Positions 44,025 to 60,534 of a stretch of 64,000 nt of DNA are shown here, one piece after another. This DNA is from Iphione sp. A-MEVVRFRX5. Its lineage: Eukaryota. Below the pieces are notes generated by a model. The model made no database searches, had not been told where the DNA came from, and worked only from the letters and a program-made list of their open reading frames with translations. The stretch lies in the NCBI GenBank assembly GCA_976226885.1, contig OZ320321.1:46128001-46192000 (forward strand). Reading direction: 5' to 3'. Position 1 is the stretch's first letter. Each line of letters begins with the position of its first letter. The translations under genes and the position numbers were made by a program.

Positions 44025-47000
44025 TTTTTCTCTAGGTGTGTATGTCAATAGGTGTGCAATGTAGGGGTTAAGTTGTGTATGTATGGGTGTGTATAAATAT
44101 GTGTAGGTTATGATTGTATAGGTGCATGTAGATATCTACATATGTGTATAGATGTGTATGTGTGAAATGCATGTCATTGTAAGTATTTGTGCATAGGTGT
44201 GTGGACATATGTGGATATGTATTTGAAGTATGAATAGGTGTCAGCATGTGTATGAAAGTGTACATGGAGATGTGTGATTTTTAAAGATTTGAATGAGTAT
44301 GTGTAAATGATTTCATGTATATGTATATATGTAGTTCTATGGATTTAGGTGTGTAGTGTTACTCATGATATAATTTTGTTAAGTGACAGTTGAATCAGAG
44401 CTGTCATTAATGCCACTCACTTATATCTTTCTATATTCACTGTTGTCAAGATTTTTAGATAACTAGAAGTTCTTATTCAGGGGAGTCCAGCATTTGCCAT
44501 CCCAGATTAACATGGAGTAAGTTTTACATCTCATCCATATAGCCTATATGACTCCACTTAGACTACATTTACTCCTTTATAAGAAGATTCAATGATCACA
44601 TGACTCTATTCTAAAAAGAGTCAAATATATGAATCTAGTCTGAGTGGAGTCATATTGACTCTGTTGTGGAAGAGAGTCAAAACTGACAGCTCAGGAGAGT
44701 GAATCTGGAGACAAGTGATGGACTCCACTTTAGAGTCACCCTGACTCCCATTTTGTTTTCAGTGAAGCCAAACAGGCTACACATGCGTTTGCATGCAAAA
44801 GCACAGACATGCACAAACATGTACACAGTCACACACACATATTCATATTCACCTCCGAACCTATGCCTGTAAAATAGGGAAATCTTTCCGCCGTGTTTAT
44901 TCAAAATCTTCCTAATTTTTTCAAATGGCATGTTTCTCTGGACAAAGGAAACAAACCTTTGACATGATAGATGATATGCCCCTTGTCAGGCATATTCAAA
45001 GGCTGATCCCCCTTAGGAAAAAACAGTATTTCTAAATGCAAACATGGCATGAACTCTGCAGTTTCTTCAGTATTTACAGATCTGTCACTCATAATGGTTT
45101 AGGTGCCTTTCACATGCATCCGGATTTTTCCATTCCATGTCTGCACACGGGGACGGATATTTCCCAGCATATTCTAAGCAGTACGGTACTTCAGATGCAT
45201 CATGATTTTTCTGTATCTGTACATGGGTGCAGATGTCAAACCATCGATGATGGGTTTGGGCCCAAATAATGTGTGGATTCCATAGGATGCAATGGTTAAG
45301 AGACAGCTGCAGACCATATGGTACTTAGCTAACACTCTCTGTAGGGGGTTTCTCCGTGTCCACACACAGGGACGGATTTTTCATCCTGATACATGTGAAC
45401 AGCGCCTTGCATTGTGCCAGGCACTATATCTGGACCATGAATCATGTGGTTAATAATACCAAATGTAAATCCAGGTTGGCAGGCACGGAACAAGACGAGA
45501 CAACGTTTTGCTGCTGACATTTAATCGTGAAGAGAGCAAAAATTATAGTGACGAAGAAGGTGAGGCCACAAATATGAGATATAAGTTTCACATCGTCAAT
45601 CCTACAAGTTGGATTTCACCATGAACGGTTCTGTGATGTGAGTGATCAGTGAAGCAAGGTATTACAACATCTGTATACGTGTGGCAATCCAATCCAATTA
45701 CTATATGCATATAATGTGTATGTAGATAATATTTAACGTGTACATTTATGATGATCTTTTAACGTGTACATTTATGAAAAAAACATAGAGTGCCATATCT
45801 ATCAAAGGGCCAAAGCATATGAAACAAAAGGAAAAAATGTTTTTTTAAAAGGGAAAAAACTACCGAGCAATGGGCAGTACCTGAGAACATTTTATTGTTT
45901 ATTTTTCATTTTGGAAACGGTCCGACAACTGAACAAGTTCAGCGAAACACCACACGCTGAAAAAAACTCACAGCCATATCATTGTGGGGAGGCACAACAG
46001 AGCCGTTGTAACCACAGCTGTTTTTGTGGCTACCGTGATGGTCCTTCTGAGGTTTTCGTCTCAGTCTTTTTAAATTTTTGGCTGGAGGGCATAAAGGCAG
46101 TCTGCCAGCGAATACCAGAGAAGGACATCGAGACCAGAGGGTCTTTGTCAAGGTGGTAAAGCTTGTGGGGAAGCGAGCGTGCGGGGGGGGGGGAGGGGTG
46201 GAGGTGAATGAGAGTCAGGGGATAGACGGTTCGTGCAAAGTGGTTCGTAAAGGGAAACGAGGAAGAAGGACGAAAGGGAAGAGAGGGGTACGAGGAGGAA
46301 GGGACGACTGGGGAGGAGGACATTTTCAGTGATGGAGGGAAAAAAGAAGAGGAAAGATCAGGGAAAGCAGAAGCGGGAGACCAGGATGGAGGGAGGGAGT
46401 GAGGAAGGGAGTGTAAATTTGATGACGAAAATATCCAGGGAAAGGCAAAGAGGTGGTTGGGCAAGGGAAACAGGCATGGGAGGGACGGGGTGAATGAGAG
46501 TGCGTGGAAGGGAGGATGTGAAAAGAGGAGAAGGGTGGCGGGTTGCAAGAGAAAGGCACAGGGAGGAATAGCGAGAGATGGAGAGAGGAAGGGTAAGGGG
46601 AGACAGATGGGATGAAAGAGAGGGGAGAAACAGGGGAAGGCAATAGCAGAGAGCATGTAGGAGAATGTGTGGAAAAGGGAAGGGGCAACAGAATAAAACA
46701 GAAAGCGAAAGCGGGAGAGAAGGATGGGCAGAGAGGAGAGGGAGAGAAAGATAGGACGAGAGGATGGTGAGAGAGACGTTTCTGGGCCTGGAGAGTAGGG
46801 TAGGGTAGAGTAGGGGCGGACAGGAGGCAGAGCCAGTGAGGTTTATATAGGCCGGGTATTTATTTTAACTTTCTGATATTACATATATATAATACATTGG
46901 TCTTGTGTCAATTTATATGTGTAACATATCAGTCTCGTCTTAACAGCCCCGTAGTGAAAAGATTAGACTAACCTTAACATCAGTGTGATGTTATATTTCA

Positions 47001-54195: not shown

Positions 54196-55324
54196 GCGGT
54201 CTTATTTGCTCTTCGTCCTCTCTCTTTGCCCCTCTTTTTTTCTCGCTCCCTATTTCCACTAGGCGTCCCTGTCTTTCTTGCGCTCTGTATCTCGGCTTTT
54301 CTCTACAGCATACAGGAATATGTTCTGCTTTGTTGGTCACAAAAAATATATGCATGTACACAGCACTAGTTTGTTCAGAGAACCATTCTTACATATCACT
54401 TTCTGCTGGCAATGCTCTCACCCATACGATTTCCATGTGTAATTGTTGCTTTCACCTACAGACCCAGAATATTCCCCTGGGGTATCTGGTATATCTGGTA
54501 TATTTATTGATGACGTATTAACAATGGTGGGCTGAATTGATAAATGTATATATTTGCTGCTATGAGACCATACTGTAAAGCGACAAATAGCTTTAACATG
54601 GCAAAATGAACTCAGAAGGAACTTTTCGCATATGTTAACCTATGTAGCATAGTGCCACTATGTGACCAACCCGTGATGCGACCATATCAACATACGACCT
54701 CGCCTACCTATCTCATAATTCTCTACCAATCTTTACTTATACGTCTTGTCTCATTCGTTGTCCTGTCACTGTTTTTACAGTACTATGACCCCCCCCCCAA
54801 CAGAAGTATCGCCACACATATGTCGACCAATATTAATCCTTTGTCGATCTAGACATCAGATGTTTTTTGTTACTGTTAATGCTTTGAGCTGCATCACAAT
54901 ATAGCCTGCACGTCCAGTCTGTCACTCTGTCCCTCTGTGTGCGAGTGCCAGCCACTCAGGCCCCATAACAGCCAATCCACAGGGTCATTAACTTGGTCCA
55001 GCCTGTTGTTCACGGCTATTACCTCGCTGGTTTGATGGAAACCTGCCATGGTGGGGGCACAATCCCACTCGAAGTGAGGGGCTCGATTAGATTTGGTGGG
55101 ATACAGACAAGGCTTGGTCACATTCTATGCTCTTCTCAAAGTGAAGATGGAAACAGGGAGATCTTTGGACAGCATGCCTGGGGGCAACCATGGCAGTGAA
55201 GACGGCCACACAGAAAAGGATAAAGAACACATGTAGTGGCAAGATAGATAGAAAAAACATGAGGAGAAATGGTTGGTGATAATGAAACCATTAATAAAAA
55301 GGTGAATATAGTACATATATTTAA

Positions 55325-56206
55325 AGCACGGGCGCCATCTTTTTTCTTCTTTGAGCCTATGTAGCCGTGCAGTGCGAATATATCGCATACTGCACGAGGG
55401 AACAGCTGTGAAGTACGCTGCCACAGGTGAATGGGAGCGCGACGAGGTGTTGTTAGCTGTGGATTAGTGGGTGGGTGGTGTGCAATCAGTAGTAAAGTGT
55501 GTGGTAGACATTGAAAAATACATAGGCTGGTGATTTGCAGGGGATTCGAACCCATGTATTTCCATTCTGCATTAGATGCCTAACCCACTAGACCACGGCG
55601 ACATGACTTCTGGTTAAAATGAATTGGGTNNNNNNNNNNNNNNNNNNNNNNNNNNNNNNNNNNNNNNNNNNNNNNNNNNNNNNNNNNNNNNNNNNNNNNN
55701 NNNNNNNNNNNNNNNNNNNNNNNNNNNNNNNNNNNNNNNNNNNNNNNNNNNNNNNNNNNNNNNNNNNNAAGAGAGAGGAGAGGGAGAGAGGGAGGCAGGA
55801 GAGAAGGAGAGAGAAGGGGAGAGGGAAGAGAGGGGAGAGAGAAAGAGAAGGAGAGAGAGGGAGAGTAAGAGAGAGGAGAGGGGAGAGCGAAAAAGAGAGA
55901 GAGGCAGAGAGAAGGGAAGACAGGGAGGGAGAGAGAGAGGAGGGAAGAGAGGGGGAGATAAGGAGAGAGAGGAAAGAGAAGGAAAGAGAGAGAGGAGAGA
56001 CAGAGAGAGGGGAGAGAGAGAGGCAGACAGACAGAGAGAGAGGGGGAAAGAGGGGGAGAGAAGGAGAGAAAGAGGAAAAGAGAGGGACAGAGAAAGAGAG
56101 AGAGGGGGAGACAGGGAGAATGAGAGAGAAAGCAAGAGGGAGAGAGAGACAAGGAGAGGGACAGAGAGGGAGAGAGGGAAGAAGGAGAGGGAGAGAGGGC
56201 CGTGCT
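55325..56206 (-). mobile_element. Element A: TTAA-flanked, 7-bp TIR (AGCACGG/CCGTGCT), with purine/pyrimidine tract and tRNA-like A/B boxes (Kolobok-like termini by inference)
   Basis: TTAA at 55321-55324 and 56207-56210. A box TGGTCTAGTGG (55595-55585) and B box GGGTTCGAATCCC (55553-55541). Contains a 139-N gap. Confidence 0.7.
55630..55768. other. Assembly gap (139 N)
   Basis: Run of N. Confidence 1.
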
Positions 56207-56210
56207 TTAA

Positions 56211-56351
56211 GCTACATACAGAACGAGGGCATGCATGTAGGGGATACATTGTCACGGTGGGGATTTGACATACTCGGCTGCGCCTCGTGCATTCAAATCC
56301 CCACTGTGCCAATATATCCCCTACATGCACGCCCTCGTTCTGTATCTATCA
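56211..56351 (-). repeat. Palindrome P1 (~53-bp outer arms; core GA-ggc-GCA-gcc-GA on minus strand)
   Basis: atacagaacgagggcatgcatgtaggggatacattgtcacggtggggatttga pairs with tcaaatccccactgtgccaatatatcccctacatgcacgccctcgttctgtat with 4 mismatches. Core at 56274-56286. Confidence 0.92.
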
Positions 56352-57803
56352 CGAACATGATCATGTGGTGAAGGATAGAGAGGATTCAGGAGGTAAATCT
56401 AGTAAAGTACAGTCAAAAAGAATTAGAGTAAGAAGAAGCCATGTTAGATATTTAACATAAGATAATTCAAACAGGCAGTTAGAAATGTATCCAGTCATTA
56501 GAAATATATAAAATGTAGATAGGTAGATGGTTACTAATCAGAATTCATGCAACAAAATAGCAAACAATGTAGAGTTATGGTATGCGTATCATTAAGGAAA
56601 TTATCAATGCAAGATAGCAGTTAATACGGAATTATACATGACACGGAAGAAACAGAACTTGGAAGTACAGTGTCAAACAACAATCATTTTTCCAGTAGGT
56701 ACATTGGAAAACAACGAAAAGTTACTAGTGAATCAGTGACAGATGAGGACGATTGTGCCGCCCCTGCAGCCACTTCTTAACTATCCCTATCTCCCTAATT
56801 ATTACCTCTGCCGGACCCTCTCGATACTTGAATAGCACTTTAATAGTACACAACCTATTATTTCCAGCGGAAGTAGAGGCAGCTGGGTCGCCCCTTTCAT
56901 ACCCTTGTCGTCTGACTTTTAAAACTGCTGCATACCGGACTATAATGGGTCGCTGTTAGCACAAGGCAGACAGGCACTGGCGCACATACTGACATGAATT
57001 GGGCACTTCAGAGGTCATTGATAGCACTCTAAAGATCATTAGGGACTAATTACTGCGCAGCCGACGTCGAATTAAAAAGCGATTCAAACCAACGTCATGG
57101 CCGCCGTAGGAACGTGCAGACGGTAACTGAATGGTGAGATAATAATAAGTGTGTTGCTGGAGTGACATAGTCACGCGTGTCTCAAGCTTATGAATGCAGT
57201 GTTACGGCTTAGTAGGGAAGTGTAGATCGGTCTCCCCTGGATTAATAGCTAAGTTAATAATAGATACAAGATAATCTAGCTATTGGTAGTAAGGGCTTTA
57301 TCACGACTAGAGCTCAAGCTGAGCTAATAATGGGATGGATATCTGGCTACTCTAGGACCAGGTCAACAGCTAATCCTATAAATGGAGGATATCTGCTTAT
57401 TTCTAGTGGTATAAATCTACAGTAGAGCCAGGTGAACAACTAAGCTATGAATGTAGTGGGCAAGGTAATCTAATGGGAGTGGAAATAGTGAGGAAGCGAG
57501 GATGAGTAAGAAAGCGGTGGCCTTCGGTCTGGAGTTGGACGTCTCCCATGAGCACAGCATAGTCAAGGCCCCGGGAATCCCTGACAAAAGGAGATACATT
57601 GAACAGGGAAGTATGCTTTCCCTCGGACATTATACATTTTCACCAGAAAAATGGCTTGTTTACTGAAGGGCTTGCATATAAGGGTTTGGACAAATTAATT
57701 CTGCTCCGAGTTGAACCTGCTGTATTATAGCGAGGTTGCAGCATAGTTGAGATGACTGCGGCTCCATGGGTCATTGTAAATACTGTATGTGTGTACATAT
57801 ACA

Positions 57804-57937
57804 TGATAGATACATACCGAGGAGAGCATTGTACATGATATATTCACACAGAAGGGATTAGCACGAGGCGCAGCCGAGTGTGATAGCCCTTCTGGGCGAA
57901 TATATCAAGTACTTGCTCTCCAAGGTGTGTATCTCAC
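57804..57937 (+). repeat. Palindrome P2 (homologue of P1, inverted; core GA-ggc-GCA-gcc-GA on plus strand)
   Basis: agatacataccgaggagagcattgtacatgatatattcacacagaagggattagcac-GAggcGCAgccGA-gtgtgatagcccttctgggcgaatatatcaagtacttgctctccaaggtgtgtatct. Core at 57865-57877. Confidence 0.9.
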
Positions 57938-57941
57938 TTAA

Positions 57942-58056
57942 AGCACGGCCCCCTCCCCATCCCTCTTACCCCCTCTCTCTCCCCCCTCTCTATATCCTAT
58001 ATTCTGGGCGAATATATCAAGTACAAGCTCTCAGGTATGTAACTAACTTAAAGCAT

Positions 58057-58101
<45 letters not shown>

Positions 58102-59187
58102 CTTCAAGCCCTTCTGTACCAATACATCAAATACACATGACACAAGGTATGTATCTCACTTAAAGCACACCTCCCTTCTGCCCTCTATCTCTCTCTCTCC
58201 CCCCTCTCTCTCCCCCTCTCTGTATCCCCTCTCTATCTATCTCTCCTTCTCCCTTCCCTTGTCCCACTCCTTTCTCCCTCCCTTTCTCTCCCATTCTCTC
58301 TCTTCCTCCCTTTCTCTACTGTTACCTCTCTCTTTTCTCTCCCTCTCTCCCTTTTTTATCTCTCTGCCTCTCTTTGCCTCACTCCCTCTCTCTCTTTCTC
58401 TCTTCTCTCTCCCTCTCTGCCTTACCTCTCCTCTCTCTAACTCTCTCTCTCTTCATGCCTCAATCCCTACCATGCTTTCTTGCTCTTCCTTCTCTCACTC
58501 TTCCTCTCTGTCTTCCTTTCACTCTCCTTGCCTCCCTCTCTCTATCTCTGTCCCTCTCTCTCCCCTCCCTTTTTCTCCCTGTTTATCTCTCTTTCTCCTT
58601 TTCTCCCCTCTCTCCCTCCCTCTATCCCTCTTTCTCTCTCTCACTCCCCTCTCCCCTCTATCTCTCGCCCTCTCTCTCCCCTCCCTCCCTCCCTCTCTCC
58701 CTCTATCTCTCCATCTCTCTTCCTCTCCTCTCTCACTCCCTCCCTCTGTCTCTCTCCCTTTCTCTGGCCCCTCCCTCTCCCCCTTTACTACTACCTATAT
58801 CATGTAACAAAAGTGAGGCCTTATTGGTCTAGTACGTTAAGAGAAAACACATGTAAAACACATACTAATGCAGATGGAGGGCAAAAGCAGGCTAACGCAG
58901 CTCAACGTATGTAAGGAAACTGACACTTAGTGTACTACTTTTAACTGTGCCGCAGTGGTCCAGTGGTTAGAGTGCTTGCCTGGTAACATCTGCTATACCT
59001 GTGTGGATTCGATTCCCATCAGGAACTTTACAGAACACTGATTTCGTCGCCAATACCACTTGAATTGCCAAACCCTGTTAATTGCTCTCTCACACCTACA
59101 AATGCTAATCCAAACAATGACTTTCTGTGATATATTGATACACTTGGCCATATAGGGCCAAAGAGAAAAAAAGATGGCCACCGTGCT
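57942..59187 (+). mobile_element. Element B: inverted homologue of element A (TTAA-flanked, AGCACGG/CCGTGCT TIR, CT tract, tRNA-like A/B boxes)
   Basis: TTAA at 57938-57941 and 59188-59191. A box TGGTCCAGTGG (58956-58966) and B-box-like GGATTCGATTCC (59005-59016). Tail aaagagaaaaaaagatggccaccgtgct matches the element A tail aaagaagaaaaaagatggcgcccgtgct. Confidence 0.7.
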
Positions 59188-60534
59188 TTAAATGCAAACA
59201 CATGTAAATACATTCACATTATAACAAAACAAAATATGGCAGATGGTACTGTTCAATTGTACCTAACTCTCAACTTTCACTCACCGCGTTACATAGTACA
59301 TACATACTTTCATAAGCTATGGTTACCCTCGTCTTACAAAAATATTTTAAACGGCTTGCGTTTTTGTCTTTAATTGCGAAACCACAAGTGACCCGTGGGT
59401 TTTATTCAATTTGCAATCCGCATTTATATTGTGGGTGTTTGTCTCCTTATCCAACCGTCAGATCAGATGATGATTGACATTCCTCTCCCTCCTACTTCCT
59501 ACCTTCTTCACATCCCTTAACTGTATCTGTAGACTCAGCTCGATCCCTAGCCCACCCATACACTACCGTAAAAACTCGACTGAGACCAGCGCGTAGACCT
59601 TGGCAGTTTTGGTTGCGAATCTTCTCTAATTTTCAAATTCTAAAAAACTCCCGCTTTGTTCAAATTGTTTTCTTTGTTATAATGTAGAAAGGGAATTGTA
59701 TATATTCCAGCCTGCCAGATGATACGCGAAGACACATTTCTTATATTCTATGACGTTCCTTCTGCTAGCAGATGCCATGGCACACACTACTGAGTTGACC
59801 CGGGTAAAGAGTCAAATTAAAATGATCGGCAGTTCAAACACTAAAACCATACGAAACTGTGGTGGTGTTGGACAATAGCAGTCTACAGATGCAGTTTGAA
59901 AGGAAGAAAATGCTTTTCCCTTAGAGATATACAGTTGCATCAAGTGAATTCTTTAGGGTCCGAATTTGCATATACTTTCCATCCTTCTGAAGCTTTTCTG
60001 ATCAACACGCGATGTGCCTATTGATCAGATTATTAAAGGTAGGCGTAGGGGGGCGGGTACAGGTGCGGGTGCGGGTGCGGGGTTATATGATATACATGAA
60101 GGAGCGCTAAGCAACATGCAACTACATGTACATTAAACACCATTATCTGCCAACTGTAAAATCAGTAAGGAGGAGGGGGCTCGCTGGAGATGGGAGGTTA
60201 CTGTGGATGCAAGCTCTTCTCCCACCCTTGTTCCACAGGCCTGATGCTGATATCTTTTTATTCGAGGCAATTCATTTTAAACAAAAGAATATAAACAAAA
60301 ACACCGACGTGGCTGGTTGGAAGGTTGATGAGAGCGTTTGTCTCTCAGCTCACGTAGAATCAATATATAATGAAACGATTCCCTCCGTTACAAGTTTGAA
60401 TAGACCCACTGGCTGCAGCAGCTAAAGGTCAGGTCACTTCCCGTCTAGCCTGCATATTGATAGATAGTCCATGTCATACTGCACTGTGTATGCGGGGACG
60501 TGTGTGTTTGTCTGCATGTGTGTGCGTGACTATC

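What the first reader, a model, noticed from the sequence alone, without database searches (positions are those of the whole stretch)
55321..59191. Mirror-symmetric ~3.9 kb composite: [A][P1] - 1.45 kb spacer - [P2][B]
Seen: two diverged copies of one multi-part unit lie back to back. Read from the inner boundary outward, each unit is TGATAGATAC, a ~130-bp palindrome, TTAA|AGCACGG, a long CT tract, tRNA-like A/B boxes, AAAAAAGATGGC..CCGTGCT|TTAA, then a short similar flank. Every module mirrors in order and strand, yet the arms look only ~70% identical by eye. Inference: this is either an unnamed composite non-autonomous element inserted twice, or a composite-transposon-like unit whose outer TTAA ends could move the spacer as cargo.
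Basis: partly seen in the sequence, partly recalled or inferred. Interest (0 to 1): 0.72.

Follow-up and report, generated by a model that had tools for sequence, protein, structure and literature searches.

The report
Two inverted gene-less Crypton transposon copies
The mirror-image structure is two separate insertions, facing each other, of a short gene-less relative of a Crypton jumping gene (moved by a tyrosine recombinase); the pairing is ordinary, but the family has a clear end structure, a short inverted repeat beside a long DNA hairpin, that animal Cryptons were reported to lack.

Summary
The mirrored layout is real. It is not a composite of a TTAA element plus a palindrome. Each arm (55321-56352, minus strand; 57803-59191, plus strand) is one complete copy of a single 0.86-1.5 kb non-coding repeat family, with at least 536 exact terminal modules genome-wide.

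The unit, read in gene sense, runs: 135-142 nt hairpin, TTAAAGCACGG, CT-rich tract, tRNA-like A/B boxes, conserved tail ending CCGTGCTTTAA.

Hairpin copies that lack a nearby tail carry a Crypton-type tyrosine recombinase gene (DUF3504 and Phage_integrase) directly inside the hairpin. Ten recombinase genes elsewhere have the hairpin end or the tail at the expected distance and strand. The arms are therefore gene-less Crypton derivatives. My first reading, Helentron HINE, failed.

The arms fall in different subfamilies (100/100 split). Each has a 95-96% relative elsewhere, so they are independent insertions. The 1,450-bp spacer is single-copy, which gives no support for cargo movement.

A nested insertion gives exact ends and shows no target duplication, with xTA microhomology at the junctions. 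TTAA belongs to the element's inverted repeat.

The assembly gap lies between the tRNA-like module and the microsatellite. Both sides fit one element, and I did not fill it.

Earlier notes of this scan describe the same Crypton end layout on other DNA of this genome.

The parts
55321..56352 (-). Left unit: complete gene-less Crypton derivative of the P1-type subfamily. Gene sense is the minus strand. It contains an assembly gap.
   Evidence: Both ends match the family. Hairpin is 95% identical to copies on C17.
55321..55425 (-). Conserved terminal module of the left unit. In gene sense it ends ...AAAAGATGGCGCCCGTGCTTTAA. The terminal copy of the 11-nt inverted repeat is at 55321-55331.
   Evidence: nhmmer E 4e-25 against a profile of 22 copies. 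The pattern occurs 536 times in the genome against 0 for the control.
55542..55595 (-). tRNA-like module with B box GGTTCGAATCC (55542-55552) and A box TGGTCTAGTGG (55585-55595), in gene sense.
   Evidence: Read. An A/B pair at this position is kept in 14 of 22 complete copies. It is not a tRNA for ARAGORN or Rfam.
55630..55768 (.). Assembly gap (N, length estimated) inside the left unit, between the tRNA-like module and the GA-rich tract.
   Evidence: It was left unfilled.
55769..56199 (-). GA-rich (CT-rich in gene sense) degenerate microsatellite, occupying the position of the recombinase gene in autonomous copies.
   Evidence: The ORFs here are low-complexity only.
56200..56210 (-). Internal copy of the inverted repeat (TTAAAGCACGG in gene sense), abutting the hairpin.
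56211..56352 (-). Terminal hairpin P1. Its outer end reads GTGATAGATAC in gene sense.
   Evidence: Fold -53.9 kcal/mol, z -13.3. 20 of 39 stem pairs show compensatory changes across 29 copies.
56353..57802 (.). Host DNA between the two hairpin ends. Single-copy and without a credible ORF.
   Evidence: Only the self match in the genome. ORFs are 68 aa or shorter.
57803..59191 (+). Right unit: complete gene-less Crypton derivative of the P2-type subfamily. Gene sense is the plus strand.
   Evidence: The compared parts (406-nt 3' portion and hairpin) are 96% identical to sister copy G000:C10:53697782 (L047).
57803..57937 (+). Terminal hairpin P2.
   Evidence: Fold -36.6 kcal/mol, z -9.3. Belongs to the P2-type clade, 100/100 support.
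57938..57948 (+). Internal copy of the inverted repeat, TTAAAGCACGG.
57949..58180 (+). Two further partial reiterations of inner hairpin arm plus repeat-like motif plus short CT tract, with a period of about 110 bp.
   Evidence: the repeat finder families D5 and D7. P2 partial matches. Also present in L047.
58181..58784 (+). CT-rich degenerate microsatellite.
58956..59016 (+). tRNA-like module: A box TGGTCCAGTGG (58956-58966) and B-box-like GGATTCGATTCC (59005-59016).
59087..59191 (+). Conserved terminal module ending ...AAAAAAAGATGGCCACCGTGCTTTAA. The terminal inverted-repeat copy is at 59181-59191.
   Evidence: nhmmer E 5.5e-24. 1,138 first-look candidates in the genome.

Best explanation
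The region holds two independent insertions, hairpin ends facing each other across 1,450 bp of unique host DNA. Both are non-autonomous (gene-less) derivatives of a DUF3504-type (CryptonA-like) Crypton transposon, from two diverged subfamilies.

In gene sense a family member runs: outer end GTGATAGATAC, a 135-142 nt hairpin, TTAAAGCACGG, then the body, a tRNA-like A/B-box module, and a roughly 105-nt tail ending CCGTGCTTTAA. In autonomous copies the body is the recombinase gene. In the two window copies it is a CT-rich microsatellite.

Proposed mechanism, inferred and not shown. The recombinase of autonomous copies acts in trans. It excises the element as a circle, in which the terminal CCGTGCTTTAA meets the hairpin end and pairs with the internal TTAAAGCACGG. 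The two ends thereby complete one long palindrome that carries the crossover point. The circle then integrates at a host xTA by exchange over a 2-3 nt microhomology, without target duplication.

The mirror symmetry of the locus is a by-product of two insertions in opposite orientation. It is not a functional unit.
For: One unit. In all 22 distinct complete copies the terminal module and the hairpin lie 0.86-1.5 kb apart in one orientation.

Copy number. There are 536 exact terminal patterns and 162 exact P1-type hairpin ends, against controls of 0 and 3.

Crypton link.
- In L010, L005 and L012/L013 the DNA just inside the hairpin and inverted repeat encodes DUF3504 (E 1e-20 to 1e-10), a Phage_integrase C-terminal part (1.3e-4) and a QRICH1-like N-terminal ORF.
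- These proteins are 64-80% identical to each other and sit at the same spacing from the hairpin.
- The GHRSNAVRLY tyrosine motif is present.
- Seven recombinase genes elsewhere have an exact hairpin outer end 730-816 bp upstream on the expected strand. Three on C1 have the exact terminal module ending 386-816 bp downstream. All 10 fit the expected geometry and none contradicts it.
- L016 holds a 1,147-bp deletion derivative with both ends and a remnant of the recombinase N-terminal ORF.

Ends and target.
- Removing the nested copy in L016 rejoins CTGTAT|CTATCAT of the host hairpin exactly, so there is no duplication or loss.
- A paralogous empty site for L009 is collinear with the joined flanks.
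- The element starts with TTA (my orientation), and the flank beyond the hairpin end is N-T-A, with T in 19/22 and A in 21/22.

Structure. 20 of 39 stem pairs change on both sides yet stay paired. The joined ends extend the stem through the junction.

Independence of the arms. They sit in different clades (100/100), each with a 95-96% relative elsewhere. The spacer is single-copy.
Against: - No autonomous copy was read end to end.
- In L010 the box expected to read HxxR reads HSGK. Activity of the recombinase is untested.
- No sequencing run was listed, so there are no empty alleles, circle junctions or transcripts for these two copies.
- The left unit contains an assembly gap.
- The layout (subterminal inverted repeats, microsatellite, terminal hairpin) is also that of Helentron-derived HINEs, and intact Helentrons exist in this genome.
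Confidence: 0.85

Rival explanations
1. The units are Helentron-derived non-autonomous elements (HINE, DINE-1-like or pearl-like), moved by rolling-circle transposition through the Rep-helicase-endonuclease proteins of the intact Helentrons in this genome.
For: The layout matches published HINE hallmarks: 11-15 nt subterminal inverted repeats, a microsatellite, a palindrome after the second repeat, and no target duplication (PMC4067079; PMC7492417). Intact 2,136-2,168 aa Helentron ORFs with Rep, PIF1 and Exo_endo_phos domains are present. This was my own reading up.
Against: Neither BLAST nor nhmmer profiles of the two ends find anything in six 20-kb Helentron loci and twelve 3.5-kb ones. A tyrosine recombinase gene sits inside these very ends at more than 10 loci. 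The target is T|NTA (G|ATA in the nested case), not TT. The hairpin is about 140 nt, against stems of a few to some tens of nt in HINEs.
Confidence: 0.05
2. The whole 3.9-kb stretch is a functional pair. Either it is a composite transposon that carries the spacer, or it is a recombinase-invertible cassette in which the two inverted hairpin and repeat sites flip the 1.45-kb spacer.
For: The 11-nt repeat and the 16-nt loop core are identical in both arms despite roughly 68% overall identity. Family members cluster more than uniform chance predicts: on C1, 93 exact ends give 4 clusters within 6 kb against about 0.29 pairs expected (my count). Inverted pairs of gene-carrying copies recur.
Against: The spacer is single-copy, so the composite has never been copied. 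The clusters are heterogeneous, both tandem and inverted, at distances from 0 to 6 kb, and some are inverted duplications that include host flanks (L012/L013). No read data exist to show the inverted state. Excision between inverted sites is not expected for a tyrosine recombinase.
Confidence: 0.04
3. The mirror structure arose by inverted duplication, through palindrome formation or fold-back repair, of one unit.
For: Long hairpins promote such events. L012/L013 looks like exactly that, with identical flanks on both outer sides.
Against: The arms are only 64-68% identical. Each has a 95-96% relative on another chromosome, and they fall on opposite sides of a 100/100 branch. The outer flanks are unrelated beyond the target preference.
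Confidence: 0.02
4. A piggyBac-type TTAA-specific miniature element (TTAAAGCACGG...CCGTGCTTTAA) or a tRNA-derived SINE, each time next to an independent fold-back element P.
For: TTAA sits at both ends of the sub-element, with perfect 11-nt inverted repeats. A/B boxes and an A-rich stretch lie before the tail.
Against: The sub-element was never seen as a complete copy without P, and P was never seen without the adjacent repeat. The nested insertion shows the mobile unit includes P and makes no TTAA duplication. The A/B boxes lie about 1 kb inside the unit, not at its 5' end, and there is no target duplication, so it is not a Pol III retroposon.
Confidence: 0.02

Closest known systems
[quoted passage not shown]
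   Same: These are gene-less copies that share both end regions with a tyrosine-recombinase (DUF3504/YR) element, far outnumber the autonomous copies, and make no target duplication (here).
   Different: That paper reports no terminal repeats of any kind in animal Cryptons. This family has an 11-nt inverted repeat (one copy terminal, one internal), a roughly 140-nt terminal hairpin, a microsatellite body and a tRNA-like A/B-box module.
Helentron-associated interspersed elements (HINE, DINE-1, pearl, DTC84, Cg_HINE)
   Same: The overall layout is the same: an inverted repeat at one end and just inside a palindrome at the other, an internal microsatellite and tandem reiterations, high copy number, and no clear duplication.
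   Different: The gene found inside these ends is a tyrosine recombinase, not Rep/helicase. The hairpin is much longer. The target is xTA rather than TT. A/B boxes are present, whereas pearl and DTC84 lack complete ones.
DIRS retroelements (inverted terminal repeats plus an internal complementary region)
   Same: An internal segment is the reverse complement of the sequence formed when the two ends are joined. The enzyme class is also a tyrosine recombinase.
   Different: There is no reverse transcriptase. The elements are 1-2.6 kb DNA elements, and the internal copy is part of a hairpin stem.
Folded single-strand recombination sites of bacterial tyrosine recombinases (integron attC, CTX phage attP)
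   Same: The hairpin's pairing is conserved while its sequence drifts, and the recombination point lies in a stem.
   Different: This is an analogy only. No evidence here shows that the Crypton site is used in folded or single-stranded form.
piggyBac-type TTAA miniature elements
   Same: The letters TTAA occur at the boundaries of the inner part.
   Different: TTAA is inside the element's inverted repeat. There is no TTAA duplication, and the two true termini are not inverted repeats of each other.

Membership tests
Crypton (DUF3504 / CryptonA-type), non-autonomous derivative | Autonomous relatives encode a tyrosine recombinase (the DUF3504 domain is Crypton-YR derived) | tested here: met
   DUF3504 at E 1e-20 to 1e-10, with a Phage_integrase C-terminal part, in ORFs of L010, L005, L012 and L013. 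128 scored relatives at 54-86% aa identity. Tyrosine motif GHRSNAVRLY present.
Crypton (DUF3504 / CryptonA-type), non-autonomous derivative | The gene-less copies share both end regions with the gene-carrying copies | tested here: met
   The hairpin and inverted repeat of gene-carrying copies are 88-94% identical to P1. Seven further genes have the exact hairpin end 730-816 bp upstream, and three have the exact terminal module 386-816 bp downstream. The L016 deletion derivative has both ends and a gene remnant. No single autonomous copy was read across both ends.
Crypton (DUF3504 / CryptonA-type), non-autonomous derivative | No terminal inverted repeats at the two extreme ends and no target-site duplication. 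Short direct repeat or microhomology at the junctions instead. | tested here: met
   The ends GTGATAGATAC... and ...CCGTGCTTTAA are unrelated. Exact rejoining in L016 and the paralogous empty site. TTA inside one end matches N-T-A in the flank of the other (T 19/22, A 21/22).
Crypton (DUF3504 / CryptonA-type), non-autonomous derivative | Complete catalytic tetrad R-H-R-Y and movement through a circular intermediate | tested here: inconclusive
   Tyr and His motifs are present, but the HxxR box reads HSGK in L010. Circles cannot be tested with these tools, and no runs were listed.
Helentron / HINE | 11-15 nt subterminal inverted repeats, the second one followed by a palindrome, often with a microsatellite or central repeats | tested here: met
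   Definition from PMC4067079 and PMC7492417.
Helentron / HINE | Autonomous partner encoding Rep-helicase(-endonuclease) with the same ends | tested here: not met
   No match of either end in 18 Helentron loci. A tyrosine recombinase gene lies inside these ends instead.
Helentron / HINE | Insertion within a TT dinucleotide | tested here: not met
   The base before the element is T in only 13/22 copies. The flank after it is N-T-A. The nested insertion lies between G and A.
piggyBac-type miniature element | TTAA target duplication on both sides of the mobile unit and inverted repeats at both extreme ends | tested here: not met
   The hairpin end is flanked by NTA with no duplication. The inverted repeat partner lies about 140 nt inside the element.
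tRNA-derived SINE | Pol III head at the 5' terminus, target duplications, tail at the 3' end | tested here: not met
   The A/B boxes lie about 1 kb inside the unit, 150-250 nt from the tail end. No duplication. No tRNA call.

The most novel reading that the evidence does not exclude
The 11-nt inverted repeat plus the roughly 140-nt hairpin is the actual recombination site of this animal Crypton lineage. It would be a palindrome split by integration and rebuilt on circularisation, read by the recombinase as a cruciform or folded strand. The tRNA-like Pol III-type module would assist mobilisation.

If so, abundant 'HINE-like' miniature elements of marine invertebrates without a known Helentron partner may in part be Crypton derivatives. 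Inverted pairs such as this one could be substrates for recombinase-driven inversion of host DNA.
Probability: 0.3. Interest if true: 0.75.

Novelty: new variant of a known kind. Interest (0 to 1): 0.45.

Why it matters
The mirror composite itself does not matter: it is two insertions. The family behind it is useful for three reasons.

- **Mechanism.** How Cryptons move is still a model by analogy, and animal Cryptons were reported to have no terminal repeats (PMC3212892). This family has hundreds of copies and base-exact ends from a nested insertion. Its hairpin keeps its pairing through compensatory change, and the internal repeat pairs with the far end. Together these give concrete, testable candidates for the recombination site and the crossover microhomology (xTA).

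- **Annotation.** The layout imitates Helentron-derived HINEs closely enough that I misfiled it myself until the gene inside the ends was found. Structure-only classification of such miniature elements can therefore be wrong.

- **Open observation.** A tRNA-type A/B-box module kept in 14 of 22 gene-less copies of a DNA transposon is unexplained.

Tried and rejected
1. **Helentron/HINE reading.** Intact Helentrons exist. However, there were no shared ends, no convincing subterminal repeat plus palindrome within 7 kb of their ORFs, and no profile hits. I abandoned this reading.

2. **piggyBac TTAA element, SINE and inverted duplication.** All rejected; see the rival explanations.

3. **Read-level test for empty alleles or spacer inversion.** The look-up of sequencing runs listed no run.

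4. **Fetching second copies of Helentrons, and later full Cryptons.** After that only coordinates could be used.

5. **One search used wrong coordinates.** The query included the hairpin itself. It still showed that the L009 flank is a repeat. Paralogue alignments start at query base 148, which fits the no-duplication join, but I treat that as weak evidence.

6. **Literature search for the end motifs.** It found only unrelated primers. A search for Crypton together with hairpin or palindrome listed no paper describing such ends. That ranking is not an exhaustive test.

7. **Rfam.** It gave only sub-threshold miRNA-precursor hits on both strands of P1, a generic long-hairpin effect.

8. **Repbase and Dfam.** They could not be searched with these tools.


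Full report
**Observation**

Reading 55000-59500 and the repeat scan confirm the mirrored order of modules. TTAAAGCACGG is found exactly four times in the 64-kb window, at 55321 (+), 56200 (-), 57938 (+) and 59181 (-), plus one one-mismatch copy at 58048. None of 100 shuffles gives five matches. The 16-nt loop core of the two palindromes is unique to them.

P1 (56211-56352) and P2 (57803-57937) fold as long DNA hairpins with z-scores of -13.3 and -9.3. The arms are 64% identical in the terminal 110 nt and 68.5% in the hairpin.

The tRNA-like parts have good A and B boxes but are not tRNA genes. There are no real ORFs in the units or the spacer. The window holds no further copy.

**The assembly gap**

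The gap at 55630-55768 lies between the tRNA-like module and the GA tract of the left unit. The terminal module on its left is of the type that accompanies P1-type hairpins in other complete copies. Order, strand and total length (1,032 bp, against a family range of 862-1,521 bp) fit a single element.

This makes continuity likely but does not prove it. Nothing coding crosses the gap.

**One element, not two**

A search of the window's own 1.18-Gb assembly shows P1 is a repeat with 366 first-look candidates. In the loci returned, the 'TTAA element' end lies 0.8-1.4 kb from the hairpin, always in the same relative orientation.

The same holds when starting from the other end of the right unit. 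That search gave 1,138 first-look candidates, a 96% sister copy at G000:C10:53697782, and P2-type hairpins at the expected distance.

Twenty-two distinct complete copies of 862-1,521 bp were delimited. Exact-pattern counts are 536 for the terminal module and 162 for the P1-type hairpin end, against 0 and 3 for reversed controls.

**Independent insertions**

In a tree of 29 hairpins the two window copies fall on opposite sides of a branch with 100/100 support. P1 is 95% identical to copies on C17. P2 is 96% identical to L047.

The spacer 56353-57802 matches only itself in the genome. The locus is therefore neither an inverted duplication nor a unit that has ever been copied as a whole.

**First classification, and why it failed**

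The layout is that of Helentron-derived HINEs: an 11-nt repeat at one end, its inverted copy just inside a terminal palindrome, an internal microsatellite and tandem reiterations (PMC4067079; PMC7492417; PMC3879986). The genome also has intact Helentron ORFs of 2,136-2,168 aa with Rep, PIF1 and endonuclease domains.

However, neither BLAST nor nhmmer profiles of the two ends hit any of 18 Helentron loci. I could not find matching end structures near those ORFs either.

Earlier notes of this scan (ids s1-313916, s1-312010, s1-313926) described Cryptons of this genome with 'TTAA-IR ... IR-TTAA plus terminal hairpin' and a tRNA-like cassette. I took these as a lead to test.

**The test**

Four P1-type loci had shown no terminal module within 1.5 kb of the hairpin. 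In those loci the DNA directly inside the hairpin and inverted repeat carries ORFs with these Pfam matches:
- DUF3504, at E 1e-20, 1e-10, 8e-13 and 2e-13
- a Phage_integrase C-terminal part, at 1.3e-4
- a QRICH1-like N-terminal domain

DUF3504 is the Crypton tyrosine-recombinase-derived domain (PMC3212892; PMC13465315). The proteins of L005, L010 and L012/L013 are 64-80% identical to each other and sit at the same spacing from the hairpin. The motif GHRSNAVRLY, with the catalytic-type tyrosine, is present, although the HxxR box reads HSGK in L010.

A genome-wide protein search returned 128 scored relatives. I crossed their coordinates with the pattern lists. Seven have an exact hairpin outer end 730-816 bp upstream on the expected strand. 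Three on C1 have the exact terminal module ending 386-816 bp downstream. None has a contrary geometry. By chance well under 0.01 such coincidences are expected.

L016 contains a 1,147-bp copy with both ends and a 141-aa remnant of the N-terminal ORF. This bridges the gene-carrying and gene-less forms.

The gene runs away from the hairpin, so gene sense is the plus strand for the right unit and the minus strand for the left unit. The tRNA-like module is in gene sense. Autonomous copies should be about 2.4-2.6 kb.

**Ends and target**

In L016 one copy sits, inverted, 7 nt inside the hairpin terminus of another. Deleting exactly GTGATAGATAC...CCGTGCTTTAA rejoins CTGTAT|CTATCAT, the normal hairpin end. 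The ends are thus defined to the base, and nothing is duplicated or lost.

A diverged paralogue of the L009 insertion site, at window 45272-45408, is collinear with the joined flanks.

Across 22 copies, the base before TTAAAGC is T in 13. The three bases beyond the hairpin end are N, T (19/22) and A (21/22). The element's own TTA at one end and the host's NTA at the other resemble the short direct repeats or microhomology described for Cryptons. They fit an exchange between a circle junction ...CAC|TTA... and a host xTA.

TTAA is therefore part of the element's inverted repeat, not a target duplication.

**Hairpin**

Across 29 copies, 20 of 39 stem pairs show changes on both sides that keep the pair, while the loop core stays constant. 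When the two ends of either window unit are joined in silico, the terminal CCGTGCTTTAA pairs with the internal TTAAAGCACGG and lengthens the stem through the junction.

This is a structural potential, not evidence of use.

**Pairing**

Family members cluster. On C1, 93 exact terminal modules form four clusters within 6 kb, two tandem and two inverted, against about 0.29 pairs expected under uniform spacing (my count). The same is seen for hairpin ends and recombinase genes.

The arrangements are heterogeneous. They include a zero-distance nested pair (L016), inverted duplications with shared host flanks (L012/L013), tandem arrays with periods of 794 and 1,280 bp, and pairs like the present one. 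No recurrent composite architecture emerges.

I could not compare this clustering with that of other repeat families.

**Verdict**

The element is a new, structured variant of a known kind, a non-autonomous Crypton. The same end layout has been noted by this scan on other DNA of this genome.

Noticed in passing
L016:1507-2789 (G000:C15:45044460-45045742): A nested, inverted insertion of one family member 7 nt inside the hairpin terminus of another. The inserted 1,147-bp copy keeps both ends and a remnant of the recombinase N-terminal ORF.
   Followed up: yes
L012/L013 (G000:C22:11074065-11077262); also C19:15504003/15507736, C19:24764572/24769592, C13:9432436/9435547: Inverted pairs of gene-carrying Cryptons 3-5 kb apart with equal scores. 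In L012/L013 the outer host flanks are identical, so this is an inverted duplication that includes host DNA.
   Followed up: partly
G000:C1:50833960-50835568 and C1:102243211-102244512: Tandem arrays of the terminal module with periods of 794 and 1,280 bp, all copies on the same strand.
   Followed up: no
G000:C1:82284638-82284786: A 149-bp mini copy in which the exact terminal module and the exact hairpin outer end lie only 149 bp apart.
   Followed up: no
L033+L039 (G000:C2:18364798-18371301) and five other loci: Intact Helentron ORFs of 1,932-2,168 aa. The 2,168-aa one was scanned and shows a cysteine-protease-like N-terminus, DUF6570, Helitron_like_N, PIF1 and Exo_endo_phos. Their ends were not found within 6-8 kb of the ORF.
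   Followed up: partly
window:45272-45408: A copy of an unrelated dispersed repeat, 72% identical to the DNA around the L009 insertion. It serves as a paralogous empty site.
   Followed up: partly
window:56214-56348: Sub-threshold Rfam hits to miRNA precursor families (mir-4803 at 44 bits against a gathering score of 90, MIR2118, MIR408), mir-4803 on both strands of the hairpin. This is a generic long-hairpin effect, not an miRNA call.
   Followed up: yes
window:55362-55391 and 55351-55410: The terminal module of the left unit contains a small hairpin (GTGCAGTGCGA..TCGCATACTGCAC) that weakly resembles the middle of the big hairpin (nhmmer E 0.03; the repeat finder family D6).
   Followed up: no
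window:1873-2093 and 30976-31105: Two further assembly gaps in the window, outside the finding.
   Followed up: no
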